Assembly: GCF_001194135.2 (NCBI RefSeq)
Contig: NC_068988.1
Span: 74,119,988-74,179,798, forward strand
Length of the DNA stretch: 59,811 nucleotides
Direction of reading: 5' to 3'
Source of the DNA: Octopus bimaculoides
Taxonomy: Eukaryota
A program made the position numbers and the translations under genes. How positions within the stretch are numbered: position 1 is the stretch's first letter; every line of letters begins with the position of its first letter. Positions 1,621 through 59,811 of the stretch are shown piece by piece. The notes under the pieces are model-generated. The model was not told where the DNA came from. It worked only from the letters and a program-made list of their open reading frames with translations, and did not search any database.

Positions 1621-1687
1621 TCGACCCTAGTGTTGTCTCTGGTCGACCCTAGTGTTGTCTCTGGTTCGACCTTGGTGTTGTCACTGG
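1621..1687. repeat. 3 x 22-bp tandem repeat (TCGACCCTAGTGTTGTCTCTGG) within ORF1
   Basis: Units at 1621-1642, 1643-1664 and 1666-1687 (third unit diverged). Confidence 0.9.
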
Positions 1688-2230
1688 TTCTTGTGCTGTT
1701 ACAGGTGCCTCCTCCCTTGTTTCATCCACCACTTCGTCTTCTTGCTCTTTGGTCTTACATTCCGCCCTGATATGGCCTTTTAGACCGCAGTTGAAGCACC
1801 TAGGCTTCCTTCCTTTGACAAAAACTATTAATTTATCTCTTCCACCTAAATTAATAGTTTCTCCGATCTCTTCTAACGTAGCTGCTTCCGCTTGAATTAT
1901 CAAGCATTGACCTTTCCAACGTTCTTCCTTTTCCACCGAGGCCTGGAGTATTGTTATTTTTACCTCCAGGCCCTTCGTGATTCCTGCAACCAAACAAGCT
2001 GCATCCACTTCCGGTGGGATATTGTTAACTTTTATTTTTGACGTTCTTCTTCCCATATATACAAGAAGAAGAACCACCTCCTGTTCTGAGTGTTCCGAAG
2101 AGTATTTTCTCGCTGCCTCTTCCGACCTGAACCTTACCTCTATTGTTCCAAATCTCTTTGCTTGGTTGATATAGGTAATTTCAGGCCATATTTTTTAAAG
2201 ACATTTCTCTATTATTTTTTCTTCCATTTT
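1649..2230 (-). pseudogene. Tx1/L1 ORF1 remnant (gag-like, CCHC knuckle)
   Basis: ...KLIVFVKGRKPRCFNCGLKGHIRAEC; upstream reads KRFGTIEVRFRSEEAARKY. Confidence 0.75.
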
Positions 2231-22700: not shown

Positions 22701-22990
22701 CAGTATATGATACAAATATGCCTTTTGTAATGAACAGAAGACAATTTTCTGGAATACCTGCATTTGCTATGACCATCAACAAATCACAAGAACAATCATT
22801 TTGTCAAGTTGGTATTTATTTACCTTTTCTTGTGTTTAGTCATGAGCAGCTTTATGTTTCTTAAAGCAGGACAAAAAGCAAGGACAATCTTAAGATACTC
22901 ATAAATAATGATGGAAAACAAGGAAATCTTTACGGAAATCACAGATTTACAATGAATATTGTAATAAAAGAACTTTTGGAATGGCATTAA
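19770..22990 (+). mobile_element. Autonomous-type Helitron relic (Rep + PIF1 helicase), many frameshifts and deletions
   Basis: GKLFQQW; ILPSSFQGSPRDM; VKYIFKYLYK; FHLRLLLLHVKG; FLDGPGGSGRT; IIDEVAML; FSRWLLKIGNG; HRLKLKVGCIVMLL; FAMTINKSQ. Possible decayed CTAG end at 23420-23423. Confidence 0.92.
20263..20604 (+). mobile_element. tRNA-derived SINE, family A, inserted in the Helitron (TSD CCTATA)
   Basis: A box TGGCTTAGTGG, B box GAGTTCAATTC; CCTATA at 20257-20262 and 20605-20610. Confidence 0.85.
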
Positions 22991-24029
22991 TTACATGTTA
23001 AGATATGTGTCCATATGTACAATATGCATATGTAAACATAAGTAGTCTCACTGTTTTTTTTTACTCTGTGTTTCATTAACTAGTGTGGAGTTACATGCAT
23101 GTCTTTTGCTTTTTTCTAAATGAAAGTGTAAAATTTTTGTAAATACAGTATTATCATTTTGAATTAAATCATTCAATGAAACATTAGAATAAATTTTTTG
23201 TACAATATTTGCATATATATATATATATCATTGTGACTGATTATTTTTGGCTGACAGTTGGCACTGTCACATTTATGAATTTTTAAAAATATTTTTTTCT
23301 TCTAAATAAACAGTGCAAAGTCTTAAAACAAAAAATTTATCAATAATTTTTCTCATTGTTTTGATGTGCTATTTTCAATAATTAATATAAATGTTGGCAT
23401 TTTTGATGACATGGGTATGCTAGTGTATTAATGTTGATTTTGTTCCATACTTGAAACACTGTTATCTTTATTTCTTCTTAATTATATTGCCTTATTTGTT
23501 ATTCAGTTATCTTGCCCTTTTATTTTTTATATTTATCCTGTTTCATATTTGTCTATATTTGTTTTTACTCTTATTTTCTTATTTTCCTTATTTCATTTTT
23601 TTTCTGCTTTCTCTTTATTTTTTTTATATATATGTATCATTACTTTAATTTCTCCTTAACTTGTGAGTTTGTTCTAACCATTATTATTTGTCACTTCTGT
23701 AGCTATTTCTACTTTGTTTGAGCATGATTCCTTACTTGATAATATTTTCAACTTGATTTATATTTCAATATTGATATATAGAGTAAGGCAGTGAACTGAC
23801 AGAATAGTTAGCATGCTGGTCCAAATGCTTCATGGAATTTCATCTGTCTTTACATTCTGAATTCAAATTCTGCTAAGGTAAACTTTGCTGTTCATCCTTT
23901 CAGAGTTGATAAAATAAGTATCAGTTGATTACTGGGATCAACATAATAGGCTTAATCCCTCTGTCAAAATTGCTGGCTTTGTGCCAAAGTTAGAAACCAA
24001 TATTAGAATGTCTCCAATTACCTGAAATA

Positions 24030-24614: not shown

Positions 24615-24718
24615 CATATTTCACTCAACATAATATGGAGTTTGATCATTTTCTATGTAAAGTTATGCAAGGTGACATTACAGCTATTAAACAATGTATT
24701 GTAAGAAATCCTGATAGA
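24615..24718 (+). CDS. Ankyrin-repeat protein gene, exon A (ATG at 24635: MEFDHFLCKVMQGDITAIKQCIVRNPDR)
   Basis: Polypyrimidine tract + TAG acceptor, GTAAGC donor, phase 0 join in frame to exon B, ankyrin N-cap-like sequence. Confidence 0.7.
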
Positions 24719-25799
24719 GTAAGCTGCTCCTTTTTATTGTCATCTCAAATTTGACTGTTATTTTATCTTTATATTCAATTTAGAAGTATATGTATATATA
24801 ATCAATATATGGAAATATATTTTATACTCAATATCAAATATTCTTAAGTCTCCATGGATATTTTTGTCCATGATATTTCATTTCATTTCCCACTCATCCC
24901 ACTCTTCCTTCCTCTAATCATCATCATCCTCAGTAGTAGCATCAGCTGCAACAGCAGTTTAAGAAAGACAAAGGAAAGCTAGAGTTGATTGAATATAGGT
25001 TAGATAGAAAGCCACTATGATGTAAAGGAGTGATCTGATAAGAAATATTCAGTCCAAAAGTTAGTGTCAATAAGATGTGGATATGTTTATTAGGAGTTTC
25101 TCATGCCACATACAGTTGATGACATTGCCAATTGTCATTCATTGTGTGACTTTGAACCTGAAATCCTCTCTGGAGCTATACAGGTTGTATCTAGATAGAG
25201 GAAGGCACCCAAATTGATAAATAAGGGGGTTGTTTTTCTCATAGTGCAAAGTAGAATGACAGATGGGACACTTAGAGTATAGAGACACCAAGATTAAGGG
25301 ATAGTGTTATAATTACAGGCCAACCTTTGATGATCTTGCATGTATTTAAATGATGGGTGATTTCCTTCAGGTGATGTAGTCAGTGTTGTTTAGCTGAAAT
25401 ATATAATTCCAAGACACTGCTGAATATATGTAAACTCCAACTGCTGACTGCTATCTTAAAATTTCTTATTTTCTCCACCAGAGATAATACATTACTATAG
25501 AATTTCATGAACTATGCCAGAGAATATAAAAAGAATCTATGCAAATATTCCTGAGGATTTTGATTGTTTATAGATCTATTCAGTAAATTATACACCATTT
25601 TATGGTCTGATCTCTACAGTAGGGTTAATTCAATGCTTTCTGTTATTTAGCTGCATCTCCTATCATCTGTTACTTAAAATTTTATCAGTACTCTCTTTCA
25701 ATTCATTATTGATATCGTAGGTAACAGCATTATAGTAGAGATTGTACCTAAAACCAACAACTTATATTTAATAAGAAACAGATTTCTAAAATAGTGATG

Positions 25800-28557
25800 A
25801 TATAGCTTTAGTTAAGCTATACACAAATAAATTAACAGAAACCCAGATTTATTCAGTTAAATACATGAGGGTGACAGCCGCCAGTCACTTCTACCTTGTA
25901 GAAGCCTACTTAACCAGAAGTCCACTTTGCTGCAGACCAGCTCCCTAGCTAGCCTGCAGCAAAGTTCCTGTCTACAGTTCATCTGTCATAAATCCTTGGG
26001 CAGTGCCCTACATACAGCTCCCCACCAGAACTGTTGACTGACATTGGAATTGGGAAAGTGTTTTAACTGCTCTGCTGTGCATGTGGTTACTCAACTCTTT
26101 GGTGACTGTTCCTTGCCAAGGGTTAATGTGATTTACCTGGGGTGGCCGCTGTTTGGTGGTTGAGCTACTTGGATGGTGCTGTCAATATTGAGATGGGCTG
26201 GTTACAACCTATTTATAGAAACTGTGTCTTATTGTCTGCCAATTAGGAGTTAGAATGATTTGTCTCCCGGACATATGACTTCGTATGAGCCATCATAGGG
26301 TGACTGGAGGGGATTTTGTCTCATGTCATTCGAATGAACATGAAGTTAGCCATGTGGAAGTCATTTGGTACAGATGATCTAGGTGTACCATGTGTTGACA
26401 TGGGAATAAGACGCAACTGGCCCACACTGACTCTCAGTTGCATGAGGTACCTTTTGACATCCGGGTTTGACTTCGTGTTCAGAAGGAACTCTCCTGGCAC
26501 TGTAAGAGGGGCACCATACACCATTTCCACAGAAGAAATGTTGAGATTTTCCTTTGTGGGGGTGGGTGCAGATTCCCAGCATCACCCATAGAAGATGATC
26601 AATCCAATTGGGCCCATTAAGTTTGGTTGTCAGGGATTCCTTCAGGCAGCGGTAAAATCACTCCACTAACTCGTTGGCCTGTGGAGTGCTTTGGGGTGCT
26701 GATGGCCCTTGGCTTGTTTATAGGAGATGCAGGTCTTGTTCCACTCTGCAATTTGCTTGGCTACACTATTCCAGTCTATCAAAAGAGTCACTAGGTGCTT
26801 CTTGTGTAGCCCTGCATTTTGGCTTGCAATAAGGATATCATCTAAGTATGCAAAGACAAAATCAAGACCCTGCACACAGTGTCCATCAGGCATTGGAAGG
26901 ATTGTGCTGTATTTTTTAAGCCAAAGAGTGTATGTAGGAATTCATACAGCCTGAAAGGAGTGATCACAGCAGTTTTCAGTACATTGTTGTCTTGTACTGG
27001 TATTTGGTGGTAACTTCGGATAAGGTCAACCTTCAAGAAAACCGAGCACCTGGCTAGCTGGGCTGAGAAGTCCTATATGTGCAGAATGGGGTAGTGGTCA
27101 GGTGTCATGTCTGCATTGAGACAATGGTAATCTCTGCAGGGACACCAACCTCCATTGGGTTTTGTTGCCACATGCAGGAGTGATGACCAGGGACTGCTTG
27201 ATCAGTGAATTATGCCCAATGCCTCCATATTGTCAAACTTGGCCTTTGTGATAGCAAGTTTCTCTGGTGATAGACAACATGTGTAGCTGTGCCCTGGAAG
27301 GCCAGTGGTGGAGATGTGGTGTGTCACTCTGTGGTGGGCTGTAGGTTTGGAGAATATCGAGGTAAAGAGATTGGAGTTACTCGCAAGGAAATTTGAGAAT
27401 TTGTTCTCGGTCTGAGAGATGGTTGCTATGCATGTTCAGCTGTTGCCAGAGACCTGGAAGCATATGTGTTGTTGTTGATGAGTCATCTCCCCTGCAAATC
27501 AACCAGTAGCAAGTGTGCTCCAAGAAAGTCTGCCCTGATAATGGGCTGATGGGCATCAGTGATGGTGAATGCCCATGTGTAATTTTGTGAGCTGATGTTG
27601 AGAGAAAGGATGCAGTGACCATACGCCTCAATTGTGGAGCCATTGACAGCTGTTAAAGGTTGGCCCTGCTTTCCATAATGGAGGTCCCTTGCCAATGCTG
27701 GTATTATGCTGACTTCTGCTCCAGTATCGATTAGGAACCGACATCTGGAGCTTTGATCACAGACATGGAGCAGTTGATCGTGTCTGCCAGCCACAGGGCA
27801 TTCAGTGGCAGCCGGCCCTGGAGTTTCCTGGGGTCGATGGGCAAAGGATCCTGACGATACATGGTTGTTGGTACTTCATAACCTTTTTCCCAAACTTTGT
27901 GTCATAGAAGCACAGGCCATCTTGCTTAACTCTACCATGTCTCAAGGCCAACCCTATGGCATTGACCATAATACCACTGGATAAAAAATGTTTGTCAGCT
28001 GCTTTTGCTAACTGCCATATTCCTTGATCTCGGTCTGAGTTATGAGGGCCTGGACCTGGAGTGGTAACTTGTGGAGGAATATTTCCCTAAACAAAAAGGA
28101 AGGTGACACACTAGAGGGAAACTAATGCCACCATCTTGTCCAATTCTTCATCCAGTATCTTGGCTGCCACTTCCCGGTCTCTCTGCTGGAATGTATTCAC
28201 CAACCTGTCTTTTAATATAGTGTATTTGTGTGTTGCTGGGGTTTGGGTTAAAATGTCCAGCACCCTCGTTACCATGTCCTTATCTAATACCATTCCTATG
28301 GAAGATTATTTTGTTAGGTGTGTAGTTATTTTGCATATGTTAAATTGTACTCCCACCTGCCATAGCTCAGCCCTCTTCAGCCAGAATTGTGGTAGCTTCA
28401 GTGCTGCTGTGTGATCACTTACCATGTTTCTTTGATTTTCTGTTTACTTTGATATGTGAAGTAAAAGCTGTTGTTCTTCTGTGGGATCACTAGCTAGCCC
28501 GCAGCAAAGTTTTTGTCTACAGTTTGTCTGTCATAAATCCTTGGGTGGTACCCTACA
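25800..28557 (-). mobile_element. Gypsy LTR retrotransposon, internally deleted (gag, protease, RT, integrase C-terminus)
   Basis: LKLPQFW gag; FLIDTGAEVS protease; YLDDILIAS RT; EMVYGAPL integrase; LTR starts TGTAGGG at 28557 and 26012; PPT-like GGTGGGGAG; PBS-like TAGTGATCCC. Confidence 0.88.
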
Positions 28558-28619
28558 ATGAAATGATAAATTTATACCGAACCTCTGAGAACTTGCTAGG
28601 TTCGCTTCATTCCCATGAA

Positions 28620-29000
28620 TCATTGTATCCACTTCAACCTCACTACCATTCCACAGCCATTCATCAATGTATGTTCAATTATACCCTTATCACCACTCTA
28701 TGAATGAATGACCTATGAATGATTCAACGCCATCTCAATAACTTACTCCTGTTAGTCTATGCACAGTCAACAACCACCTCACTACTTCACCACACTTGTT
28801 AACATTTGTATGATCAAATACCACTACACTACCAGTCCACTCCCCTTAAGTTATGTATGGCCAACTACCACCTCACTACCACTCACATTATTCTGTGTAT
28901 AGTTAATTATCCTCTCACTACCATCCCGCTCCCATTAATCTATGTATGGTCAAATAACACCACACTTCCACTCAATTCTTGTTAACTTATTTATGATCAA
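28620..29000. repeat. Degenerate C/A-rich minisatellite-like tract
   Basis: Recurring TGTATG(G/A)TCAA...CACTACCA units. Confidence 0.55.
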
Positions 29001-29064
29001 CTATTTATTATACATAATGGAAGTCAGGTGGTTGTTGACCTTACACTAGGATCAAATGACTTAC

Positions 29065-29481
29065 TCTTTACTCTTTTACTCTTTTACTTGTTTCAGTCAT
29101 TTGACTGTGGCCATGCTGGAACACCACCTTTAGTCGACCAAATTGACCCCCAGGACTTATTCTTTGTAAGCCTAGTACTTATTCTATCGGTCTTTTTTGC
29201 CGAACCGCTAAGTTACGGGGATGTAAACACACCAGCATCGATTGTCAAGCGATGTTGGGGGGGACAAACACAGACACACAAACACATACACATGTATATA
29301 TACATATACATATATACAACAGCCTTCTTTCAGTTTCCGTCTACCAAATCTACTCACAAGGCTTTGGTTGGCCTGAGGCTATAGCAGAAGACATTTGCCC
29401 AAAGTACCATGCAGTGAGACTGAACTCGGAACCATGTGGTTGGTAAGCAAGCTACTTACCACACAGCCACTCCTGCACCTA
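29065..29481 (-). mobile_element. tRNA-derived SINE, family C (partial copy also at 36352-36505 -)
   Basis: Head TAGGTGCAGGAGTGGCTGTGTGGTAAG...GGTTCCGAGTTCAGTC, internal TA/TG tract, (AAGAGTA)n-like tail. Confidence 0.85.
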
Positions 29482-29771
29482 TAACTTGTCCAGAAAAAGA
29501 TAACAAATATGATAAGAAATATGTCAAAATATTTAAACCAAAATACATCAGCTGTTGGACATACATCTATAGATTTTCATGTAACAGCAGGAAATAGATA
29601 CCTGTTTCCACTGTTAGCAGAAAATGTTGTTAATCCAATGGTGATGGTTAATTTCCTTTTTTTCTTCCTTGCTATATTTGACAATACACTGCTGTGTAAC
29701 AAATTCTAGAGTGTAACAATTTAGAATGAGACATATCTAAATGTTACATCTTTCTCTCTCTCTCTCTCTTT

Positions 29772-29804
<33 letters not shown>

Positions 29805-30013
29805 ATCTCTTCTGTCTGTCTATCTATCTCTGTCTCTCTCTCTCTCTTTCTTCCTTCCTTCTTTCCCCTAACTCCCTCCCTCCTTCTCTCCATCCTTCCT
29901 TTCTTTCTCCCTCCCTCCTTCCCCCTCCCCTTCTTTCCTCTCTTTTTCCTTCCTTTCTTCTTTTCTTCTTTCTAAACACCATTATTTACTTTGTCCTCTT
30001 CTCTGTCCTTCAG

Positions 30014-30165
30014 ATTAACAATCCCAACAATTGTGGCAACACCATACTTCATTTTGCAAGTGTTAAAGGCAACACCAACATTGTCCTAATGTTACTGAAA
30101 GCAGGAGCTAGCGTAACATCAACAGATCAAGACGGCAATACACCTTTACACTGGGCAGCACTAAA
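30014..30165 (+). CDS. Ankyrin-repeat gene exon B (INNPNNCGNTILHFAS...GNTPLHWAAL), phase 0-2
   Basis: CAG acceptor, GTAAGA donor, ankyrin consensus, 152 nt. Confidence 0.92.
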
Positions 30166-30465
30166 GTAAGATCACAACAATTTGTTTTTTAATTTTTTTA
30201 TTATTCACACACACACAAACGTATACGTAAGAGAGTGTGTCTTTATACACACAAGCCACACTATGCGTGTATATGTCGGGGTATAAATGTATATGTACTA
30301 CTATAGTAGCTGCCAAAATGACAGATTTTATTTGATAAACGTTAGAATGTGACAGAACCATAAAAACAGAAAAAATACAATATAGAAAAGGGAAATTATT
30401 TGTAAAGAGAGAGAGGGGGGAGGGAAAAAGGTATTGTTGAGCTGGTGATAGATTTAAGAGTGTGT

Positions 30466-30902
30466 GAAGGCGCATGGCTTAGTGGTTAGGGTATTCAGCT
30501 CATGATTGAAAGGTTGTGAGTTCAATTCTTGGCAGCGAATTGTGTCATTGAGCAAAACTCTTTATTTCATACAGTTCTATATTTAAGAGGTGAGGAATTA
30601 TGCACATTATTTACATTATTTACATTTGACGGATATTTGTCTTCATCTTGTTTGTTGTAAATAATGTAAATAATGTACTTTATTTCATGTTGCTCCAGTC
30701 TACTCTGCTTGCAAAAATTAGTCGTATCTGGTATTCAAAGGGCCAGCCTTGTCACACTGTGTCACACTGAATCTCCCTGAGAACTACGTTAAGGGTATGC
30801 ATGCTGTGGAGTGCTCAGCCACTTGCATATTAATTTCATGAGCAGGCTGTTCCATTGATTAAATCAACTGGAACCCCTGTCATTGTAACTCACGGAGTTC
30901 CA
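30466..30902 (+). mobile_element. tRNA-derived SINE family A, interrupted by a mini-PLE insertion
   Basis: Homologous to 20263-20604 and 42432-42750. Confidence 0.85.
30571..30677. mobile_element. 107-bp PLE-tail-derived insertion with 11-bp TSD CTTTATTTCAT
   Basis: Matches the PLE tail at 7684-7738 and 9017-9090; internal inversion; TSD at 30560-30570 and 30678-30688. Confidence 0.85.
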
Positions 30903-31090
30903 GATTTAAGTGTAATGAATACCAGAGAAGGGGAGGAACATAGCCATCAATGTGTTAGTGTAAGATCAATTAGGTGAGCTCTATGTCACTTTAATGCTGG
31001 GAATCTATTTGTCACTCTGTCTAATTATATCTATTTGTCTATATGTCTGACTGTTTCATTAAGTGTCTATCTGTCTCCATCTCATCAAAT

Positions 31091-31123
<33 letters not shown>

Positions 31124-31208
31124 CACATATATATACATACACACACATAGAAGCATATACACACACACACACTAACATACATGTGTGTGTGTAGTATATA
31201 TGAAAAGT

Positions 31209-31500
31209 GTAAAGATCCCCTTCAGTCATAAATGACCATAGGATTGTATCTAGTAAGTTTCTCTCTGAGGCACAAGTCCAGGCAAGGTTGTTTTGTGGAA
31301 GACCAACAGTTGGCCATACATACCAGTCTCTCCTCTGCATGCTATCGATGTTGTCCAAGGGAAAGGCAAAAGCTGATATAGCTGATACTGAAGCAATGTG
31401 AAATAAAGTGTCTTGCTCAAGAACATAAGGCACAGCCTGGTCCAGGAATCAAACTCACAATGTTACGGTTGTAAGCCCAACACTCTAATCACATAGCTAG
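31209..31500 (-). mobile_element. tRNA-derived SINE (shares the TTGAGCAAGACACTTTATTTCAC core with family A, different 3' part)
   Basis: Reverse-strand head ...GTGATTAGAGTGTTGGGCTTACAACC...GAGTTTGATTCC. Confidence 0.6.
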
Positions 31501-32051
31501 ATATGCTTGTATAGTCTTAAAACTCTGTCATTGCTAGCCTGCTTGCTTGCATGCATGCATGCTTGTCTGTAATTCAATACTGCCAAACTGTTGCATAATT
31601 GGAAAATACTCTCAAAGTAAGGTACTTCTGAAATGTGAATACAAACAGAATAAAACAAGTTTCTCATAAATCAGACCACTAATTCCCGAGATATGTGGTT
31701 TTTTGGGGTTTGTTTCCACAAATTTAAGCAGTGAAACCTGGAGTTATTGCCCTTTACTGTGAACGCCTTTATAAATAGCCAAACTGGCACATAATGGGAA
31801 AATACTCTGAAAGTAAGGTACCATTGAAATGTGAATATAAACAGAATAAAACAAGTTTTGCATAAATCAAACCATTGGTTCTCGAGATTCGTGGTTTCTT
31901 CAGGCACCTTGAACTATTAGTGACCCAACGGGTCATGGATAGTCTAATATATAATATATACAATTATATCATGACATACTTAATATATATAACCTGACTA
32001 TTATTTCCTGTCTTTGTAATATCTTTATTTTTACCTTCCTCATTCTTTCAG

Positions 32052-32208
32052 TAACCAACATGAAGTGGTGGCATTGTTGCTGTGCCATGGAGCTGATACC
32101 AACATCCTCAATAGAAACGGGTGTAGTCCACTCCATGAAGCCATCCTTAAAAACAATATAAAGGTGGTGGAGAAAGTACTCAATACAACAGATGTACATA
32201 ACGTTCAG
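32052..32208 (+). CDS. Ankyrin-repeat gene exon C (NQHEVVALLLCHGADTNILNRNGCSPLHEAIL...HNVQ), phase 2-0
   Basis: CAG acceptor; phase matches exon B (AA|T = Asn); GTTGGT donor; 157 nt. Confidence 0.9.
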
Positions 32209-37250: not shown

Positions 37251-40200
37251 CAGTAGAACCTTGCAGTACGAGTGTACCATTGTATGAGCTGACGCTAGTG
37301 CAAATTTTTGTCTTGAAGTACAACTGGAAATCAGCAGTACAAGTGAATTTCATACAAGTGACTACTAGCTGGCACTGAGCGCACATATGCTCTCCTAACA
37401 AGCACAACTTTCACTCGCTCAGTTCACGTGTTTATCTCATGGCAGCATCCCTACTGTGTTTTTCCCAATGTGTTTTTTTAGTTTTGTGCATTTTTTGCTA
37501 TTGTTTTATAATAATTACTTGTGTAGCCATAGGTCTTAGGAAGGTTAGTGCAAAGGACAGTGCTGAAGAGAAGAAAAAGCTGATTATGATAGAACTGAAG
37601 AAGGAAATCATTGATAAACATGAGAGAGGAATGTGTATAGTGGACATAACATGTCAATCCGATTGAAGCACATCAACGATCTGCACCATCCTGAAGAAAA
37701 AGGATGAGATCAAGGTCGTTACAACTGCAAAGGGTGTCTCCAGGCTCTCCAAGCAATGCACCTCTATCCATGAAGAGATGGAAAAATTGCTTCTCCTGTG
37801 GATCAAAGAAAAGCAACTCACAGGGGATATGATTACCATCATCTGCAAGAAAGCATGAGCGCTGTATGGGGATCTCCTGAAGCAGTACCCTGGAACATCG
37901 ACAGAGGAGACACCAGAAGACACATTTAAGACCAATCATGGGTGGTTTGATAATTCCAAGAAGAGGACTGGTGTTCATAACATCAGGTATAGAGAAGCAG
38001 CAAGTTCTGACATGATGGCAGCTGAGGATTTTGTGTGTGAATTCCATCAGCTCGTTGCAGCCAAAGAGTACTTCACACAACAGGTATTCAACTGTGATAA
38101 AACTGGCCTTTTTTTGGAAAAGAAAATGCCTAGAAAAACCTACATAACTGCAGAGAAGAAGACAATGCCAGGCTACAAGCCAATGAAAGAGAGGCTAACT
38201 CTCACCCTTTGTGCCAATGCAAATGGAGATTTTAAGATTAAGCTGCTCCTTGTCTACCATTCAGAAAACCCATAAGCATTCAAGTCGCACAAAATCTTGA
38301 AGGAGAAGCCTCAGGTCATGTGGAGGACAAACGTTAAGGCCTGGGTTATCAGGCAATTCTTCACTGAGTGTGTCAACCTTGTCTTCGGAGCAGTAGTGAA
38401 GAAGCACCTTCTAGAGAACGATCTTCCTCTCAAGGCCTTCCTCGTCCTTGACAATGCTCCTGCTCACCCTCCTAACCTTGAAGATAATATCCTGGATGAA
38501 TTTAAATACATAAAACTCCTGTACCTTTCATGCAACACTATCTTGCAGCCCAAGGACAAATAGGTGATTTCGAATTATAAGAAATTGTACACCAAACACA
38601 AAAAATACAAATCTAACCCTTCATGACAGTTGGAAGGAGCACTACAACATTGTTAACTGCCTGAAAATCATCGATATGGCCTGGCAAGGTGTAATGAGAA
38701 GAACACTGAATTCTGCATGGTGGAATCTGTGGTGTGACTGTGTGTCTGAAAGAGACTCTGAAGGGTTTGAATCTGAGACACCTATAGTCAAAGAGACAGT
38801 GTCTCTTGGACCACGAAGATGACAATGGGGACATTAATGATTTCATTGAGAAACACTCAGAGGAGATTATAACAGATGAACCCCTGCAGCTTCAAGAGCA
38901 GCAGCATTCAAATGCAGTGGAAGAGACTGGTTCTCTGGAGGAGAACATTGTAGTGGAGATGGCTATCTCTACAAGTGACATAAAGGCAGTATTGGCAAAG
39001 TGGCTGTATGTTTCTGAATTTGTAGAAAAATAATCATCCTGGAAAAGTATCTACAGGTTGTGCAGCTGCTTTATTTAACTGCATGATGTTTTTTTTTTAT
39101 CTGGCAGCTAGGTTGCATTGGTGGTAATTCATTCAGTTGCTTGATTCATTCAGTTGCTTGCATGTAGCAACTGTAATTGTGCTAATTGAGATCAGCACCC
39201 AGTGTGAGACAACATTCGGCATATAGTTATGTCAATCGCTTTAGTGCAAGTACTGTTTGCTTACCTAAATTATATCCCTTTGCAGGATGCTCATGCAGTA
39301 TTATTCCTGAATAAGATCACTTAACAGCACAAGTCAGATCAACTTCATATATTTACAATCACATGAATTCAAAAATTGACTTTAGTGTGGTAGAGTTCAA
39401 AACAGGGTACCACACACAGTGGCATACCACATTGTGAACAATGGTATCTAGTTTCGTTACATTTCCCTTTTGTTTTATATATTGTGCATCTCTTAGAAGC
39501 ATTTGTCTTCTTGGCGGTGTGGGGTGGGGAAACAGTCGTGGAAAATGTCTACGTCCCTTCACCAAGCAGTGAGGAGAGAGTCTGGCGTGGAGACATCCAT
39601 GCTTTCTATACTTTGGCAAGTCTGATGCTTCTATCATTTCACAGAACAATAGATTTCTGAATGTCAATCTATCCTCCACACTGCCAAGCATCTGCCAAAT
39701 CAAATGTGAATTCATGACACACAAGTCAACTATATACAAGAAACTTTTTCTGTACCATTTCACAAATTTTCTCACTAATTTGTGTGTCATCACCAACTGA
39801 TCTGAGCAATTGACCTCGCCCATCCCTTCATTGTATGAAGCAACTACACTTGGTTTCATTATGGCATTACTGCCTGCATCTTGTTTCCTAGTACCCTTCA
39901 TGCTTGCAGAATGCATTGTGGATAACATGCAGACGTTTTTCTTGTCACACCACTCTAGAGCGAGAATGCAACTATTGGTGCATCTGTGTGCTGCTTCCCC
40001 CTTTTGAAGTGTAATCTTGTGAAGTTTTATCTTGTGAAGATTGAGCAGCATGTTTTTTTGTGCATCCTCACAGTCCCACAGGCATCAGTCCTCCTTGCCT
40101 GCAGCTGCAGGAAGAGGTCTGGACTGGAAAACCAGTTATTCATATAAATATTGTAGCCTTTGTCAAAGAAGTTTTCATTCAGTAACTACACGACATCATT

Positions 40201-42983: not shown

Positions 42984-43732
42984 ATCAATCAACAAGATTC
43001 TAACAGTAGGACACCTCTATATATGGCCTGTGAGGATGGATACCATAACTTAGTTGAATTGTTACTGAAGTCTAATGTTGATGTCAATATGGCTGATAAA
43101 CATGGTAGAACACCTCTACATGTGGCCTGTCGTGGTGGATACACAGACACAGTACAAATGTTATTGCAGTTTAAAGCCAATGTCAATATGGTGGATGAGT
43201 ATGGTAAAACACCTGTACATATGGCCTGTAGTGAAGGATACTCTGCCACAGTTTTAGTCTTATTGCAATTTAAACCTGACATTAATGTGGTAGATAACTG
43301 TCATAACACACCTTTACATATGGCCTGTCATAGAGGACATCACAACATAGTAGAGGTGTTATTGCAGTCTAAAGCTGATGTTAATGTGGAAGATAGATAT
43401 GGCAGAAAGCCTCTACATATGGCCTGTTTTAGTGGACACTCTGGCACTGTAAAGGTGTTACTGAAGTTTACAGCTGATGTCAATATGACAAATAAGTATG
43501 GTAACACACCTCTACATTTGGCCTGTTATGGAAAACACATTGGTACAGTAGAGGTGTTATTGAAGTCTACAGCTGATGTCAATGTGGGGAATAGCAAAGG
43601 TAATACACCTCTACATGTGGCCTGTGGTAGTGGTGGACATGCAGACACAGTGAAAATGTTGTTGCAACATAAACCTGATGTTAATATGAAGAATAGATTT
43701 AATGACACGCCTCTACATCTGGCAGTTCTACA
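42984..43732 (+). CDS. Ankyrin-repeat gene exon D: ~7.5 tandem ankyrin repeats in one 749-nt exon, phase 0-2
   Basis: Open frame INQQDSNSRTPLYMAC...NDTPLHLAVL; CAG acceptor; GTAAGT donor; ~99-bp periodicity. Confidence 0.96.
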
Positions 43733-43877: not shown

Positions 43878-44127
43878 TAATCATCATCATCATCACCACC
43901 ACTACCACCACCACTATCATCATCATCATAATCATCACCATCATCTTCATCATCATTGCCATCATCACCATTACCATCAGTGAGATTTGAGGAAACTTGT
44001 CACTAAACCTCAGGATAACACCTCTGCTAATTAAATTAGCATGTAATAGCTCTTTTATAATAATAATGATAAAATAATAATAATAATAATAATAATGATA
44101 ATAATAATAATAATAATAATAATAATC
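43878..44127. repeat. (CAT/CAC)n and (TAA)n microsatellites
   Basis: Direct reading. Confidence 0.95.
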
Positions 44128-44715
44128 ATAGCAGCCCAAGATTAATGCTTACCTACAAGAAACTACCAGGCCAACATATTAAAGAATGGTAGCTTCCCAA
44201 CATGTCGTGTATGTCAACAACAAAATGAAACCATCGATCATGTTGTCTCCATGTGCAGTCTGCTTGCGCCTACAGAGTATCTCAACAGGCATGATAGAGC
44301 TGCACAATATATTCACTAGCTAATTTGCAAAAACCTGGACCTGCCCCATGATAAAAACTAGTGGGAATACAAACTGCCTCCAGTGCTTGAAAATGATCAC
44401 ATCTCACTCTGGAACTTCACCATTCAAACTGACAGAAAGATAGATGCAAATAGGCTAGACATTATATTGAAAGACTTCAGACAAAAATCATATCTCCTCA
44501 TTGATATGACTGTCCCAATCGATATAAACGTATCTGTCAAGACCTACCAAAAACTGAGCAAGTATAAAGATCTTGAAATCGAAATTAGCAAAATGTGGAA
44601 CCTGAAGACTAAAGCAATATCTGTTGTCATAGGTGCCCTAGGAATGATAGCAAAAGGGGCTGATTGCTACCTAGCTCAGATATCAGGAAACCCCAAAATG
44701 GCAGAAATTCAAAAC
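44128..44715 (+). mobile_element. R4/Dong-clade LINE 3' fragment (CCHC + restriction-like endonuclease)
   Basis: AAQD..LPTRNY; CRVC...ETIDHVVSMC; RHD; ANRLDII; LIDMTVP; KLSKYKDL; VVIGALG. Confidence 0.9.
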
Positions 44716-48517: not shown

Positions 48518-49930
48518 GGTTGTGAAATGCTTTCTGGCCTCATTCTCTATCGAAAATCTCATCTGTATTGTTCCAAATTTCTTCCCACTGGCTATGTATG
48601 TTTTTATTCTCCAGATTGGCTTAAGGCACTGTCATGTGTGGGAAATGAAAAGAGGTTCACTTACCTTCCTCTCTTGTCTGCGCCCGTCTAGTAGTAGTCA
48701 CTCTGGCGATCCTGCCCTACCCCGTCACCTAGTACAAGCAGCTGCTACCTCACCAACCTGAAAGCGAATTCCCTCCCGTCTGTTTGCAATGCCTCAGCCA
48801 GTCAAAAGAGGATGAACGACCCTGTCCTGTCCCCCACCACACTTCCCTTCTCACGCTTCCTCTTCTGGTTAGTCCTTTGACCATTGATGTCATGACTCTC
48901 TTCTTCTCGCTGATTCTCACATGCCCCCCCCTGATCTCAAAGATCACCTCTTCACTTCATTCCATGTTGAAATCTACCACCCACCCGAGTGGGCACCTTG
49001 CACATTGTGATCTTCTTAAACTGGGAACCTCATTCTCTTCCTCTTCTCCACAATCATCATCCGACGAAGTGACAATGCTACAAACATCCAAGACATGATG
49101 CGGCATTCCATCTACAGAGATGTTGTTTTTGGAATTGACAGCCATCACTATTCCTCTGTTCCACTGAGTTGTGCAGCGTGCCTTTTGTGACTTGATCCAG
49201 ACTTCATCTTCCAACTCCACGAAGTCAGGCCCTCTCTCTTATACAGGGCACCTCAATGGTTTACTCAGATACTACCATTCATATTTGAATATAGCTCTAT
49301 GTGACAAGGACTCTTCGGCCTGTCCTGATCGGGGTGACATGTTGTACCAGAAACATGTCCCCTCTCTGCCGTGGCCTTCGATGATGTCTCTCCACAATCC
49401 CATTTCCACTTGGCCTGCATGGCGCTCTGAAAAAGTGATGCATTTTCCACCAGTCAAGCATCTCCTTCAGAGCCTTTGAACAAAATGCTGTGCTGTTGTC
49501 CATCAGCAATTCGTCCACAGGGCTCCGCTCTAAGAATACCTCATTTAGAATACATGCCTTTTTGTCTGCAGTGCCTGTCCTCAATTCCTTCCAAATGGCC
49601 ATCCAGCCTGGCCCACAATCGACCATTGAGAGATACATCCCCTGCTGGTAGTGTGTTACATCCACTGCTAATCGTCTCCAGTTGTACTCTACCAAAACGT
49701 TTCTCTGCTCATGCACACTCGGAGTAGGGTCGATGGATTGACACCTGTTGCAGTTCTTGACCACCTTCTCAATACGCCATCTAGTAACATCGACATCAAT
49801 CCTCCTGGTGAGATACAGGGTCCTATCCATACCCATATGATGCATGGCATGCAGTCTCCTTAGATGGGAGTCATTTAACTTATACATGTGGCTACCCCTT
49901 GCTTTGATTCTTCCGGCTCCCTTAACCAGG
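48518..49930 (-). mobile_element. Gypsy fragment: integrase + PPT + 3' LTR
   Basis: HHMG...CNRC zinc finger; LAVDVTHY, LMDNSTAF, GNGIVERHH; PPT GGGGGGG then TGTGAGAATC at 48921; AATAAA in the LTR. Confidence 0.88.
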
Positions 49931-50559
49931 ACTTTTTACTTCAAATATTGCAGCAAAGAATACCAGTTCTTCTAATATATCACTCTTTACAGTTCTCATC
50001 TTTTAAATTTATTGTACAAAACTGTTCAGCTAATTTGTAAGCTTGTCTAATTAGTCACTTTTTTCTGTATTTAAGGTAGTATATTAGCCAAATTCTACTT
50101 AAATAAGTATAGTGTTATTTGTAAACTTTAATAAAATAAGTTTTAATTTTAGCTGCAATATTTTAAGTAAATTTTAAGCTGCAATATTTTTAAGTAAAAA
50201 GTTTCTTATTCTTAACTTTATTATAAGTAATAGCTTGTCCTATACTTTTACTGGTGTAATAACTTGTCCTGTACTTTTCCAGGTTTATAATCTTAAGAAT
50301 ATTACTCTTCATGCTCGCATTTTTCCATGTAATCCATGATTTTTCCAGGCATTGCTGTTATAAGATAATTAATAATGTGTCAATTAATAATTTAAGATTT
50401 TACCTTATAAAATACTGAAAGATAATATTTCAAATTTTCCATGTAAGTGATGATAATATTTCAATTTTTTTCATGTTTAATTTAAATATATGTTGTGATT
50501 GAATTATTTGATATTACCCATCCACACCAAATTAATGGCAGGGATTTTTCCCATGTTGT

Positions 50560-52350: not shown

Positions 52351-52970
52351 ATGGTAACTATTTTATTTGCAGGTTATATGGAAACCTGGTTGAAGTAGCG
52401 TATATAATTATATGTGTACTTTTTCAATATATACAAATAACATGGAAAAAAATAAATAATTACCAGGGTAGCAAAAATTCACATAAGTGCCAAGGATATT
52501 ACAGCCTAATTATAAATGTAGAAATTCCAGGGTTAAGTGAAATGTTTTTGTATAACATGGATAAATTAAGAAATGGAGTCAAATGCAGGTGTTATTCAAA
52601 TCCTTTATACTTATATTCATTGAAATCATTAAATTATGACAGTTATTAATTACCCCATGGTATTTGTATATTTTATTTTTACTTTTCACTTTCTATTGTT
52701 TCNNNNNNNNNNNNNNNNNNNNNNNNNNNNNNNNNNNNNNNNNNNNNNNNNNNNNNNNNNNNNNNNNNNNNNNNNNNNNNNNNNNNNNNNNNNNNNNNNN
52801 NNNNNNNNNNNNNNNNNNNNNNNNNNNNNNNNNNNNNNNNNNNNNNNNNNNNNNNNNNNNNNNNNNNNNNNNNNNNNNNNNNNNNNNNNNNNNNNNNNNN
52901 NNNNNNNNNNNNNNNNNNNNNNNNNNNNNNNNNNNNNNNNNNNNNNNNNNNNNNNNNNNNNNNNNNNNNN

Positions 52971-53736: not shown

Positions 53737-53946
53737 GACCAAATACTGATGGATATTAAGAACTATCACCAACAGACACCATTTATTCTATCTCTTTTGG
53801 AAGGCCATCTTGGAATGGTTCATATGTTCGTATCAAAAGGGGTAGATGTCAATGCAGTTGATAAAGATGGTAATAACTGTCTTCATCATGTATTGAAAAG
53901 AGAGATATTTCACTCTGAAAGTGAACACATGGATGTCCTAGATGAG
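53737..53946 (+). CDS. Ankyrin-repeat gene exon E (DQILMDIKNYHQQTPFILSLLEGH...DGNNCLHHVLKREIFHSESEHMDVLDE), phase 0-0
   Basis: CAG acceptor, GTAAGT donor, 210-nt open frame, ankyrin consensus. Confidence 0.9.
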
Positions 53947-54261
53947 GTAAGTTTTAAAATTGTGTGAGAGAGAAAGAAACAGATGTTGCCTCACTTCACA
54001 CCCATTAATCCCTTTGTCCATTACCATCAAGTAATCCAGTCTCTTCTAATAACCCTAGTTACATTATGTAATTCACAATATTCTTTCTTTCCACCCTCAA
54101 AGACATGACTCTACTGTTAATGAAGGTAACTCATCCAGGATGTTGGTCATATAAACACAACCATCAGAGTGGTTGTGTTTATAGGATTGGGAAGAGACCT
54201 ATTGAGGAGAGGAGGTATTCCAAAATGACAAAGATACAAGCTGAAGGAGGTGTGTGAGAGA

Positions 54262-56190: not shown

Positions 56191-57391
56191 TACATGTTGT
56201 GTCGACGCCCCCAAGCGAAGAAGTAGGATCGCCCAAGACATATAAATAGAGGTAGTCTAGCCGTGGTAGAGGAGTTGAGTAGCTCTTGGGTAGCAGTGGA
56301 GTAGAGATCATTCGAAGGTACTAGATAGCAGTAGCTTGAGACATAACAGTGGCGACGAGGATTCGCAGCTCACACAACCACTGTGTAGTATTGCAATATA
56401 ACAGTGGCGACGATGTTTCTAATAGCACCAAAAATGGAAGAGTTACTGAAAGCAGTAGTGAAACAACGAGAGCAGCAGCAACTACAGAAGTTAACAGAAC
56501 TGTTACTGCAGTCGAGAAATATGACAGAATCATTTTCAGCAGATGGTGTTGCAAATTCCATCGAAGAATTTCACTACAAACTGGATGAAGGAACTACTTT
56601 TGCGGCATATTACAGACGATACGAAGATATATTCAGAGAGGAATGTAAGGGATAGTCTAGTGAAAGGAAGGTAAGACTTCTTTTGCGAAAGCTTAAGTTT
56701 TTGTAACTTTATTTTGCCGAGAAAGCCCGCGGAATTGTGTTTTGATGAAACAATAAATATTTTGACGAATATTTTTAGTGAGAAAAGTTCACAGTTTAAT
56801 ATTCGATAGGAATGTTTAAACTTAAAGAAAAACGAGTCCAGTGATTTTGTGACATATGCTGGTATGGTTAACAAGGCTTGCGAAAGGTTCAAGCTGGAAG
56901 AATTAATGCCAAATATGTTCAAGTGTTTAATATTCGTTAAAGGGCTAGTTGCAACAGAAGATGCGGAAATTAGAAAAAGAATATTATCAAAGTTGAACCA
57001 AGATGTGAAACTCACTTTGCAGAAAGTGGCTGAAGAAAGCCAACAAATAATAAACCTTCGAGATGATACAAGGAAAATAGAAGACAAGAATAATGTACAA
57101 ATGTGTAAAGAAAGTATACAAAGAAGGAAAAATTTAAATTCAAAACGGTGCTATGGTTGCAGAGAGCGACATTTGAGGAAAGATTGCCCATTTAAAGATA
57201 AAACTTGTTTTAAGTGTGGTAAAATTGGGCATATACAGACGAAATGCCAGTCAAAGAAAACGGTAAAACAAAAGAAAGTCTACTCAACAAAAGTAAAGTT
57301 TGAGTTAAAAGAAAATGCGGTGCCGGTGTTTAAACCGAAAAGGAATGTACCATTTGTGGCATTGAATTAAGTTGAGAAGGAATTAAAACGA

Positions 57392-57919
57392 TTGGAAGAC
57401 CTGGAAGTAATTGAAAAAGTGGATTACTCGGAGTGGGCAGCTCCTACAGTATATATAAAAAAGAAGAATAACGAGGTAAGAGTATGTGCAGACTTCTCAA
57501 CTGGGCTGAATGACTGTTTAAAAAAGTATAATTATCCGCTGCCAAATCCAGAGGAAGTATGTGCCAAGTGCAATGGTGGGAAAATTTTTTCCAAGCTGGA
57601 TTTGTCTGAGGCCTACCTCCAATTACAGGTAGATGAAGAATGTGCTAAAGTATTAACAATTAACACTCATAAAGGTCTGTACCGTTTCAAAAGACTGCCA
57701 TTTGGGGTGAAGGTTGCACCAGCAATATTTCAGCAAGTAATGGATACTATGCTGGCAGATTGTGAGTTCGCGGTCCCATACCTGGATGACATATTGATTA
57801 AAAGTGAATCAAGGGACCAGTATAGTGAACATATAGAAGAGGTTTTCAAACGAATAAGTGATTATGGATTTAAAGTAAGGGAGGATAATTGTGAATTTTT
57901 TTTTACCAAAATAAAGTAA
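57392..57919 (+). pseudogene. Gypsy reverse transcriptase core
   Basis: SEWAAPTV, VRVCADF, FSKLDLSEAYLQ, RLPFGV, YLDDILI. Confidence 0.92.
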
Positions 57920-58399
57920 TTAGGACAGGTGATCAATGAAAACAGACGAAAACCAGACCTTTCTAGGATTGATGCGATAAAAAAATGCCTGCTCCCACTA
58001 ACAAAACAACACTACAAGCATTTTTAGGGTTGGTAAGTTATTACCAGTTGTACATACCTAAAATGTATGAGCTAAGAGCTCTGTTGAACAAATTACTAAA
58101 GAAGGACTCGAAATGGAGCTGGACAAATGAACGTCAGAAATCATTCGAGGAACTAAAAAAGCGGTTCACTTCAGAGTTATCATTAACTCATTTCAACCCA
58201 AAATTGAAAATAATTATGGCATCGGACGCCAGTGAATATGGCATAGAAACGGTAATATTGCATAAATTTAATGATGGTAAAATCAAAGCTATTGCACATG
58301 CATTGAGAGTTCTGTTACCAGTGGAAAGAAACTACAGCCAGATTGAAAACGAGGTGTTATCATTAATCTTCGCAATTACAAAATTCCATAAATTCTTAC

Positions 58400-59617
58400 A
58401 TGGGAGGAAGTTTACACTGCAAATGGACCACCGACCGTTATTTTCTATTTTCGGTTCAAAAACAGAAAATAACGCGCTCAGCAAACCGCTTACAGCGCTG
58501 GGGAACTACTCTGTTGAACTACGATTTTCAGATGGAGTTTTTGCCATCAATGAAAATGGGACACGCAGACAGGTTGTCTAGGCTGATTCCAAAATATGAG
58601 GAACCTTTTGAAGACATGGTGATTGCATCGTTAAAACTAGAAAAGGAACTGAAGAACATTTTGTGCAATGTAGTACGTGATTTGCCGGTAATGCTGGAAG
58701 AAATTAAATTGAAATCGCAAAATGATAGGTTTATAAATAACATTAAAAATATGTTGTGTAACACAAAAAATATAAAGGAGCTGGACGTAGGCTCAAAGTA
58801 CTATTCAGTATGTGATGAGGTATTATTATCCATGCAAAGAGTGGTAATACCTGAAATACTGCAAAACAGAGTATTAAAAGATTTTCATGTTGGACATCCG
58901 GGGATTGTCTGGATGAAAAGCCTTATGAGAAGTTATGTTTATTGGCCAAATATGGACAAACAAATTGAGAGACTGGTACAACAGTGTAGGGGATGCGCGA
59001 TGGCAGCAAGGGCGCCTCCAGTGCAGATACAGCCTTGGCCAAAAACAAATTCGGCCTGGTCCAGACTACATGTGAATTTTGCAGGACCATTAAATGGCTC
59101 CTATTATATCATTGTGGTGGATAGCTATTCCAAATGGCCTGAAGTATGTAAATGTTCAAGGCCAACCACAAGTGTGACGATTGACTTCTTGGAAGAACTG
59201 TTCGCTCAGTATGGAGTGCCAGATACGATCGTGCCAGATAATGGGACACAATTCTCAGCGAGGCAGTTCAAAAGATTCTGTAAATCGGTTCAAATGAAGC
59301 ATGTGTTAACTCCACCATACCACCCAAGGTCAAATGGGTTAGTGGAAAGATTCGTCGACACATTCAAGAGAGCTTTAAGGAAGACCAGATGGGAAACCTT
59401 TGAAGATACAAAGATGACAAAGTTTTTGCAAGTGTATAGAATAACACCGAATCCAAATGCAGAGTCGGGTAGGTCACCTGCAGATTTGATGTTTTCCAGA
59501 AAAATTTGTTCTATTTTTGACAAATGGTTGCCGAGCAGGAAACAGAAAATAGAAAATTCGGGAAGAAAAACAAAATTTTTTAACACAGGTGACAAAGTGT
59601 ATTTTAGAGTATACTAG
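58400..59617 (+). pseudogene. Gypsy RNase H end + integrase (405-aa open frame)
   Basis: FHVGHPG...CRGC; WSRLHVNFAGP; IVPDNGTQF; SNGLVERF. Confidence 0.92.
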
Positions 59618-59811
59618 CAGGGTTAAAGAGAATAATGAAATCTAAAAACGCCGTCTAGACTACGCATCATCTTTATATATAGAGATGTATATACACACAC
59701 GCACCCAAACACACGTATATATATGTATATCAATATAAATATATGAAAGTCAATGAAGTTTCGTAAAAGAAGGTGATCATGTACATACTTTCTTGCTGTT
59801 GTGATTATAAC

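What the first reader, a model, noticed from the sequence alone, without database searches (positions are those of the whole stretch)
42984..43732. Natural DARPin-like array: ~7.5 ankyrin repeats in one exon, variable at paratope positions
Seen: a conserved framework (VN..D/N..G.TPLH.AC..GH...V..LL....D, with a near-invariant Cys). Residues after AC vary in every repeat (ED, RG, SE, HR, FS, YG, GS), as do the hairpin tips (SNSR, KHGR, EYGK, NCHN, RYGR, KYGN, SKGN, RFND). Established: these are the positions randomised in designed ankyrin-repeat binders. Exon D starts (IN...) and ends (PLH.A.L + 2 nt) like the 1.5-repeat exon B, so it looks like a B paralog expanded by intra-exon ~99-bp duplications. 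Inference: a diversifying recognition surface, such as an innate-immune or pathogen-sensing receptor whose repeat number and content evolve by unequal crossover.
Basis: partly seen in the sequence, partly recalled or inferred. Interest (0 to 1): 0.7.

Follow-up and report, generated by a model that had tools for sequence, protein, structure and literature searches.

The report
Ankyrin exon of octopus MIB2-like ligase
The stretch is a real exon that encodes 7.5 ankyrin repeats, the central part of the binding domain of an octopus-lineage MIB2-like ubiquitin ligase; it evolves fast, but its "DARPin-like" pattern is what any ankyrin array shows, and its repeat number is the same in three octopus species.

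Summary
Window 42984-43732 (+) is one 749-nt exon (phase 0 in, +2 nt out) with seven full 33/34-residue ankyrin repeats plus two partial ones.

It is exon 4 of a gene whose orthologues are annotated as O. vulgaris "E3 ubiquitin-protein ligase MIB2-like" (87% identity) and an O. sinensis protein (85%). Those proteins are a ~15-repeat ankyrin solenoid, one RING finger and a Death-like C-terminus, without the Mind-bomb N-terminal domains.

At least ~40 sequence clusters share this architecture. All 20 that I looked up come from Octopus.

Paralogues carry 2 to 7 full repeats in the homologous exon, so intra-exon 99-bp duplication is supported. For this gene, however, the exon has the same length in O. 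vulgaris, has no indel, and its repeats are 1:1 orthologous.

The variable columns match those of generic ankyrin repeats (rho 0.75), so "paratope variability" is not special.

Exon dN/dS is 0.90. Amino-acid changes are 3.5-fold enriched at binding-surface positions, but omega above 1 is not significant.

An immune-receptor role is untested. I rate this an ordinary, fast-evolving member of an undescribed Octopus expansion.

The parts
24635..24718 (+). Exon A. It holds the start codon and the N-terminal cap helices (MEFDHFLCKVMQGDITAIKQCIVRNPDR) and ends in phase 0 before gtaagc.
   Evidence: One search gives the sequence. It is identical apart from the last residue to the N-terminus of O. sinensis P0238, and 97.6% nt identical to O. 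vulgaris L001 from 21458.
30014..30165 (+). Exon B, 152 nt, 1.5 ankyrin repeats (INNPNNCGNT...TPLHWAAL + 2 nt).
   Evidence: It is 95.4% nt identical to L001 27397-27548.
32052..32208 (+). Exon C, 157 nt. It starts with 1 nt that completes the split codon, then encodes helix 2 plus one divergent repeat (NQHEVVALLLCHGADTNILNRNGCSPLHEAILKNNIKVVEKVLNTTDVHNVQ). It ends in phase 0.
   Evidence: It is 88% nt identical to L001.
42984..43732 (+). Exon D, the finding: 749 nt, 7 full ankyrin repeats plus the 5-residue tail of the preceding repeat and the first 12 residues of the next. Phase 0 in, +2 nt out.
   Evidence: Its orthologue is L001 39131-39879, also 749 nt, 94.3% identical and without indels.
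52703..52970 (.). Assembly gap (run of N) that should contain the 37-nt mini exon encoding (Q)NNYDVVAL[MI]LSQ. This exon restores the reading frame between D and E.
   Evidence: Window 52604-52702 aligns to L001 42873-42982 and stops 2 nt before the acceptor of the O. vulgaris mini exon at L001 42985-43021. No candidate exists elsewhere in the intron.
53737..53949 (+). Exon E, 213 nt, phase 0 to 0. It encodes a divergent repeat and the family-specific tail ...DKDGNNCLHHVLKREIFHSESEHMDVLDE.
   Evidence: It is 92.5% nt identical to L001 45997-46209 and 47% aa identical to paralogue P0171.

Best explanation
The finding is exon 4 of an octopus gene for a truncated Mind-bomb-2-like RING E3 ubiquitin ligase.

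Shown:
- The exon encodes the central 7.5 repeats of one continuous solenoid of about 15 ankyrin repeats.
- In the O. sinensis orthologue this solenoid is followed by one C3HC4 RING finger and a Death-like C-terminal domain.
- Those later exons lie beyond the end of the window.

Inferred:
- The concave face of the solenoid (hairpin tips and the first residues of helix 1) binds the protein target.
- The RING recruits a ubiquitin-charged E2 to modify that target.
- The Death-like domain docks the ligase into death-domain signalling assemblies. This would parallel vertebrate MIB2, which ubiquitinates RIPK1 and cFLIP.

Origin and rate:
- The array arose from a 1.5-repeat exon by six tandem 99-bp duplications. 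These long predate the split from O. vulgaris/O. sinensis.
- The array has been stable in copy number since then.
- Framework residues are under purifying selection. Surface residues drift at about the neutral rate.
For: - Gene model and phases.
- Orthologues P0237 and P0238, 87% and 85% identity at 100% coverage.
- Exon-by-exon match to the O. vulgaris locus L001, including downstream exons F-I at +8 to +19 kb from exon E, which places them outside the window.
- Pfam on P0238 finds ANK plus zf-C3HC4_3 (37.8 bits against a cut-off of 27).
- The C-terminus of P0238 is 48% identical over 84 residues to the Pfam-positive Death domain of P0171.
- AlphaFold2 of P0238 gives an uninterrupted helix-pair solenoid from residue 1 to about 510, with pLDDT above 90 across the exon-D part.
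- The segment from exon E through the RING aligns contiguously with a true MIB2-type Octopus protein (P0426), which carries Mind-bomb SH3 repeats.
- Between repeats dS is about 0.54; between species dS is 0.065.
- Window vs O. vulgaris dN/dS is 0.66 at framework positions. dN at DARPin positions is 0.11, against intron divergence of 0.10-0.14.
- The role of MIB2 in RIPK1/cFLIP ubiquitination comes from PMC7815719 (abstract).
Against: - The RING and Death-like parts are seen only in the orthologues, not in the window.
- Pfam's Death model does not hit P0238 directly, and the AF2 model is of low confidence there.
- The window copy cannot be shown to be intact, because the 37-nt exon falls in an assembly gap.
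- No binding partner, expression or ligase activity data exist.
- Exon-wide dN/dS of 0.90 is unusually high for a protein under ordinary constraint.
Confidence: 0.75

Rival explanations
1. The array would be a diversifying recognition surface of an innate-immune or pathogen-sensing protein. Positive selection would reshape the binding residues, and unequal crossing-over would change the repeat number.
For: - The family is large, and every sampled member is from Octopus: about 40 clusters at 50% identity, 20 of 20 looked up.
- Repeat number in the homologous exon differs among paralogues: 7, 4, 3 and 2 full repeats.
- RING plus Death-fold domains are typical of immune and apoptosis signalling, and lineage-specific expansions of such architectures in marine invertebrates have been proposed as immune (PMC8195603).
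- Between species, 12 of 30 amino-acid changes fall on the 47 codons at DARPin positions (Fisher p 0.0045). The point estimate of omega there is 2.7 (12 nonsynonymous, 1 synonymous).
- Two recent O. vulgaris copies of the exon show pN 0.081 against pS 0.017, with introns 6% diverged.
Against: - Neither omega above 1 estimate is significant (p 0.24; p 0.13).
- Measured against intron divergence, the surface sites evolve at about the neutral rate, not faster.
- Repeat number and register are identical in three species for this gene.
- The variable columns are the generic ankyrin ones.
- The orthologues begin directly with the ankyrin cap, without a leader sequence, so the protein would be cytosolic.
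- No expression or infection data were found.
Confidence: 0.2
2. The exon would belong to a decaying or functionless duplicate. The high dN/dS would simply reflect loss of constraint.
For: - dN/dS is 0.90 for exon D and 1.05 for exon E.
- The D-to-E junction is out of frame in the window as assembled.
- The introns are packed with transposon remnants.
Against: - The frame problem is explained by an assembly gap that begins 2 nt before the missing exon's acceptor.
- All 249 codons are open and free of indels in both the window and O. vulgaris, and O. sinensis P0238 covers the exon-D query in full, while the flanking introns carry many indels.
- Splice sites are canonical.
- Framework codons are conserved (omega 0.66, and lower against introns), and exons A-C have omega 0.19.
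Confidence: 0.04
3. The gene would be the orthologue of a conserved housekeeping ankyrin protein. Candidates are the names attached by automatic annotation: PP6 regulatory ankyrin subunit, ankyrin-1/3, secG-like, or Mind bomb 2 proper acting on Notch ligands.
For: Database names of relatives. The segment from exon E through the RING aligns with a MIB2-type protein.
Against: - Identity to all non-Octopus proteins is 26-41% and limited to generic repeats.
- P0238 lacks MIB/HERC2, ZZ and Mind-bomb SH3 repeat domains, whereas Octopus has a separate protein, P0426, that carries the SH3 repeats.
Confidence: 0.01

Closest known systems
Vertebrate Mind bomb 2 (MIB2) and Mind bomb 1, RING E3 ubiquitin ligases
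   Same: An ankyrin block is followed by a short helical linker and a C3HC4_3-type RING. The last repeat and its tail (DKDGNNCLHH...FHSE...) up to the RING align contiguously with an Octopus MIB2-type protein. RefSeq names the orthologues 'MIB2-like'.
   Different: There are no MIB/HERC2, ZZ or Mind-bomb SH3-repeat domains. There is one RING instead of two or three. A Death-like domain is added at the C-terminus. There are about 15 repeats instead of about 9 (the MIB figure is from my own knowledge). The family has many paralogues, all Octopus in my sample.
DARPins (designed ankyrin repeat proteins)
   Same: The 33-residue framework is shared. A 12-repeat DARPin is the best PDB sequence match (6mol_A, 591 bits). 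The most variable columns coincide with the randomised DARPin positions.
   Different: DARPins are synthetic consensus proteins derived from natural repeats, so the resemblance runs the other way. Here Cys replaces the consensus Ala after helix-1 Ala, and helix-2 surface columns 16, 17 and 20 vary as well.
Ankyrin-plus-Death-domain proteins (ANKDD1A-like, ankyrin-R/B/G)
   Same: An ankyrin solenoid sits in the same polypeptide as a Death-fold domain. ANKDD1A-like proteins appear among the generic hits.
   Different: Those proteins have no RING finger and no MIB-type tail. Their identity is only about 29-31% and confined to the repeats.
Lineage-specific expansions of Death-fold, ankyrin and ubiquitin-ligase architectures in marine invertebrates (Kaur et al. 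2021, PMC8195603)
   Same: The theme is the same: fast-evolving repeat modules joined to Death-like and ubiquitin-system domains in expanded families.
   Different: That paper reports cephalopods as poor in the TRADD-N families it surveys, and it does not describe this ANK-RING-Death family.

Membership tests
Ankyrin repeat superfamily (Pfam PF00023 / PF12796) | Tandem ~33-residue units with the TPLH motif, each forming a helix-turn-helix plus a beta-hairpin loop. | tested here: met
   Ank_2 E=1.2e-93 and 7 Ank stretches. AF2 of the orthologue shows regular helix pairs with pLDDT above 90.
DARPin | A designed consensus protein with engineered N and C caps and library-randomised positions. | tested here: not met
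   This is a natural genomic exon with orthologues in three Octopus species. The likeness is in sequence only.
Mind bomb (MIB1/MIB2) E3 ligases | N-terminal MIB/HERC2 domains flanking a ZZ zinc finger. | tested here: not met
   Pfam on the full-length orthologue P0238 finds only ANK families and RING. The protein starts with the ankyrin cap at residue 1.
Mind bomb (MIB1/MIB2) E3 ligases | Mind bomb SH3 repeat (REP) domains, PF18346. | tested here: not met
   They are absent from P0238 and present (171.7 bits) in the Octopus MIB2-type protein P0426.
Mind bomb (MIB1/MIB2) E3 ligases | An ankyrin block followed by C-terminal zf-C3HC4_3 RING finger(s). | tested here: met
   P0238 has a RING at residues 523-566, 37.8 bits against a cut-off of 27. 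This is seen in the orthologue only, because the RING exon lies outside the window.
Death domain superfamily | A six-helix Death-fold domain recognised by the Pfam PF00531 profile or by structure. | tested here: inconclusive
   No Pfam hit on the P0238 C-terminus even at E=10. It is 48% identical over 84 residues (E=3e-23) to the P0171 domain, which scores 37 bits against a cut-off of 22.6. The AF2 model is helical there but has pLDDT 33-60.
   Exon D is 749 nt in both the window and O. vulgaris, with no indel. O. sinensis P0238 aligns over the full length with the same 7.5 repeats.
   The point estimate is 2.7 (12 nonsynonymous, 1 synonymous), Fisher p 0.24. dN at those sites is 0.11, about equal to intron divergence.
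   No expression data are available here. Literature searches found nothing on this family.

The most novel reading that the evidence does not exclude
Octopuses may have turned a truncated Mind bomb 2 into an expanded family of cytosolic ANK-RING-Death ligases. In this reading the ankyrin surfaces are under recurrent positive selection to recognise pathogen or transposon proteins, so the family would work as a restriction-factor-like sensor-effector system comparable in logic to TRIM5. New specificities would arise by 99-bp repeat gain and loss inside one exon.
Probability: 0.15. Interest if true: 0.65.

Novelty: new member of a known kind. Interest (0 to 1): 0.3.

Why it matters
The exon itself is ordinary: a consensus-like ankyrin array acting as the probable substrate-binding module of a RING ligase.

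What may be worth a specialist's look is the family around it.
- It is a truncated MIB2 derivative that gained a Death-like domain.
- It has multiplied to dozens of copies, all from Octopus in my sample.
- The copies differ in repeat number within one homologous exon.
- The exon evolves at close to the neutral rate, with changes concentrated on the binding face.

Cephalopod innate immunity and cell-death signalling are poorly known. If these ligases prove to be infection-responsive, they would be candidates for lineage-specific intracellular recognition. I found no paper that describes them.

Tried and rejected
- The first protein search, with exon D alone, gave only generic ankyrin proteins (best 43% identity). 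The tool returns nothing longer than 1.75 times the query: the maximum hit length was 436 aa for a 249-aa query, 651 for 372 and 721 for 412. The 653-668 aa orthologues were therefore invisible until the query reached 412 aa.
- Two searches with the 451-aa concatenation timed out and were not counted.
- I looked for the missing exon between D and E in three ways: a repeat HMM on all six frames, peptide similarity to the paralogues' mini exon, and enumeration of all 1-mod-3 exons with good splice sites. Nothing credible appeared. A weak 'QHYDGDVLSQ' match at about 45320 has no usable acceptor. The explanation is the N gap.
- I considered direct C-to-E splicing, which is in frame. I cannot test it.
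- I looked for a period-2 duplication history, as suggested by the higher TRF score at period 198. The pairwise identity matrix shows no such pattern.
- The look-up of encoding contigs had no record for P0238 or P0171, so O. sinensis DNA could not be used.
- The PDB sequence search only returned DARPins, ankyrins, TRPA1 and latrotoxins, that is, generic repeats.
- Four literature searches found no description of this family.

Full report
**1. What is there**

Window 42984-43732 on the + strand is a single exon. It follows a pyrimidine-rich tract and ...ccag, and it ends before gtaagt. It is 749 nt long, 249 codons plus 2 nt.

The translation has three parts: five residues (INQQD) that finish a preceding repeat, seven full ankyrin repeats, and the first 12 residues of an eighth. 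The seventh repeat has one extra Gly.

- Pfam scores it at E=1.2e-93 for Ank_2, with seven Ank stretches.
- Tandem Repeats Finder reports a 99-bp period, 6.8 copies and 71% matches.
- Five of the six most variable columns are positions randomised in DARPins.

**2. The gene around it**

Four further + strand exons belong to the same gene.

| Exon | Coordinates | Content | Phase |
|---|---|---|---|
| A | 24635-24718 | start codon, cap helices | ends in phase 0 |
| B | 30014-30165 | 152 nt, 1.5 repeats | ends +2 nt |
| C | 32052-32208 | 157 nt | begins with 1 nt, ends in phase 0 |
| D | 42984-43732 | 749 nt, the finding | phase 0 in, +2 nt out |
| E | 53737-53949 | 213 nt | phase 0 to 0 |

D therefore cannot splice directly to E. 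I predicted an intervening exon of length 1 mod 3.

The orthologues confirmed this. O. sinensis P0238 has QNNYDVVALILSQ between the D and E sequences. In the O. vulgaris locus L001 this is a 37-nt exon at 42985-43021.

The window aligns to L001 up to 2 nt before that exon's acceptor. It then runs into the N gap at 52703-52970. The exon is hidden by an assembly gap, not lost.

B+C (309 nt) and D+mini (786 nt) are both in-frame, phase 0-0 pairs split at the same point of the repeat. The lengths also fit: 749 = 152 + 6x99 + 3.

**3. Identity**

Once the query was long enough to get past the search tool's length limit, two near-identical proteins appeared:

- O. vulgaris "E3 ubiquitin-protein ligase MIB2-like" (P0237, 87% identity);
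- O. sinensis [quoted passage not shown] (P0238, 85% identity).

Both cover 100% of the query. The window therefore comes from an Octopus-type genome that is neither of these two species. A gap-rich O. bimaculoides-type draft is my guess, not a result.

In L001 all the exons are found in order, and the remaining exons lie 8-19 kb beyond exon E. That puts them past the end of the window.

P0238 contains ankyrin repeats and one zf-C3HC4_3 RING. Its C-terminus is 48% identical to the Pfam-positive Death domain of paralogue P0171, although Pfam does not hit it directly.

It lacks MIB/HERC2, ZZ and Mind-bomb SH3 repeats. Octopus has a separate MIB2-type protein, P0426, that carries the SH3 repeats.

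AlphaFold2 of P0238 gives one uninterrupted solenoid from residue 1 to about 510, with pLDDT above 90 over the exon-D part. The RING and Death-like parts are of low confidence.

**4. The family**

I searched 1.84 billion representatives with the part of P0238 from exon E to the end. About 40 clusters matched contiguously through the family tail (NNCLH...FHSE), the RING and usually the Death-like end.

All 20 clusters that I looked up are from O. bimaculoides, O. sinensis or O. vulgaris. Most are named "MIB2(-like)".

The homologous exon of O. bimaculoides P0147 has the same acceptor (ATC AAT) and the same +2-nt donor. It is 461 nt long with four full repeats. Two copies in an O. vulgaris locus have three and two full repeats. 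O. sinensis P0171 has four nearly identical repeats that differ almost only at hairpin and helix-1 positions.

Repeat gain and loss inside this exon is thus real at the level of the family.

**5. Is the surface diversifying?**

- The variable columns of this array are the generic ones. Entropy per column correlates with that of 437 repeats from unrelated proteins, Spearman 0.75, p 7e-7. The "paratope" pattern alone says nothing.
- Among the seven repeats dN/dS is 0.67 overall, 1.12 at the six DARPin positions and 0.53 elsewhere, with dS about 0.54. Framework codons are often identical even at silent sites (CCT, GCC, TGT and AAT in 7 of 7).
- Against O. vulgaris, exon D has 33 nonsynonymous and 10 synonymous differences (dN 0.058, dS 0.065, omega 0.90). 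At DARPin positions the counts are 12 and 1 (omega 2.7). Elsewhere they are 21 and 9 (omega 0.66).
- Amino-acid changes are 3.5-fold enriched at DARPin positions (p 0.0045). The nonsynonymous-to-synonymous contrast is not significant (p 0.24).
- Introns differ by 10-14%. Surface sites (dN 0.11) therefore evolve at about the neutral rate and framework sites (0.046) at less than half of it.
- Exons A-C give omega 0.19 and exon E gives 1.05.
- Two recent copies of the exon in O. vulgaris show pN 0.081 against pS 0.017, with introns 6% diverged (p 0.13).

Taken together, this is a fast-evolving protein with a relaxed or possibly positively selected binding face. Positive selection is not demonstrated.

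**6. Stability of this gene's array**

The exon has the same length in the window and in O. vulgaris, with no indel. The flanking introns, in contrast, carry many indels. Each repeat is 94% identical to its orthologue and only 62-76% identical to its neighbours.

The duplications are several-fold older than the species split. There has been no concerted evolution or copy-number change since. The other half, purifying selection at the surface positions, is not met.

**7. Mechanism**

Shown: the architecture is an ankyrin solenoid, a RING and a Death-like domain.

Inferred from established knowledge of ankyrin-repeat binding and RING E3 ligases:
- the concave face binds a protein target;
- the RING brings a ubiquitin-charged E2;
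- the Death-like domain mediates homotypic recruitment.

Mammalian MIB2 ubiquitinates RIPK1 and cFLIP in TNF signalling (PMC7815719), which makes a role in cell-death or inflammatory signalling plausible. Whether the targets are host or pathogen proteins is unknown.

**8. Verdict**

- The exon is a new member of a known kind.
- The Octopus expansion of ANK-RING-Death ligases seems undescribed in the papers I could search, and it is the only part of moderate interest.

Noticed in passing
window 42984-43732 compared with 24635-32208 and flanking introns: Synonymous divergence from O. vulgaris is much lower in exon D than nearby. Exon D has 10 differences on 160 silent sites (dS 0.065). Exons A-C have 15.5 on 83 (dS 0.215), and the introns are 10-14% diverged. 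I have no explanation for this. It inflates the dN/dS value for exon D.
   Followed up: partly
window 30014-32208 and 42984-43732 plus the gap 52703-52970: Exon pairs B+C (309 nt) and D+mini exon (786 nt) are each in-frame, phase 0-0 cassettes. Skipping either pair, for example by C-to-E splicing, would keep the reading frame and give a shorter solenoid. RefSeq lists up to 22 isoforms for one family member in O. sinensis.
   Followed up: no
window 56800-59620 (+): A Ty3/gypsy-type LTR retrotransposon pol region lies inside the intron after exon E. It has reverse transcriptase (RVT_1, 87 bits) and integrase (rve, Integrase_H2C2) in long open frames.
   Followed up: partly
window 19780-22900 (+): There is a PIF1-like helicase open reading frame (PF05970, 42 bits), broken over several frames. 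This is typical of Helitron-type elements. It sits upstream of exon A.
   Followed up: partly
window 1-2200 (-), 6997-7700 (-), 37400-39030 (+), 49300-49935 (-): Further transposon remnants are present: a LINE-type endonuclease (Exo_endo_phos), a DDE_3 transposase fragment, a DDE_1 (pogo/Tigger-like) transposase and an integrase core fragment. The gene's introns consist largely of such debris.
   Followed up: partly
window 43880-43979 and 44057-44130: Trinucleotide microsatellites, (ATC)n and (ATA)n, lie about 150 bp downstream of the exon D donor. They read as poly-His or poly-Ile in open frames but are intronic.
   Followed up: no
L003 (O. vulgaris OX597842.1) 23044-23403 and 48594-48851: One annotated gene model (P0319, 712 aa) contains two D-type exons and two Death-like exons. 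It looks like two tandem family members, or a partial duplicate, fused by the annotation. The two D-type exons differ by exactly one repeat.
   Followed up: partly
L001 (O. vulgaris OX597821.1) 21458-21541: The O. vulgaris model P0237 starts with an odd hydrophobic N-terminus. Yet the conserved first exon (MEFDHFLCKV...) is present in its locus, 97.6% identical in nucleotides to window exon A. The P0237 model also truncates the mini exon. Both look like annotation errors in P0237.
   Followed up: partly
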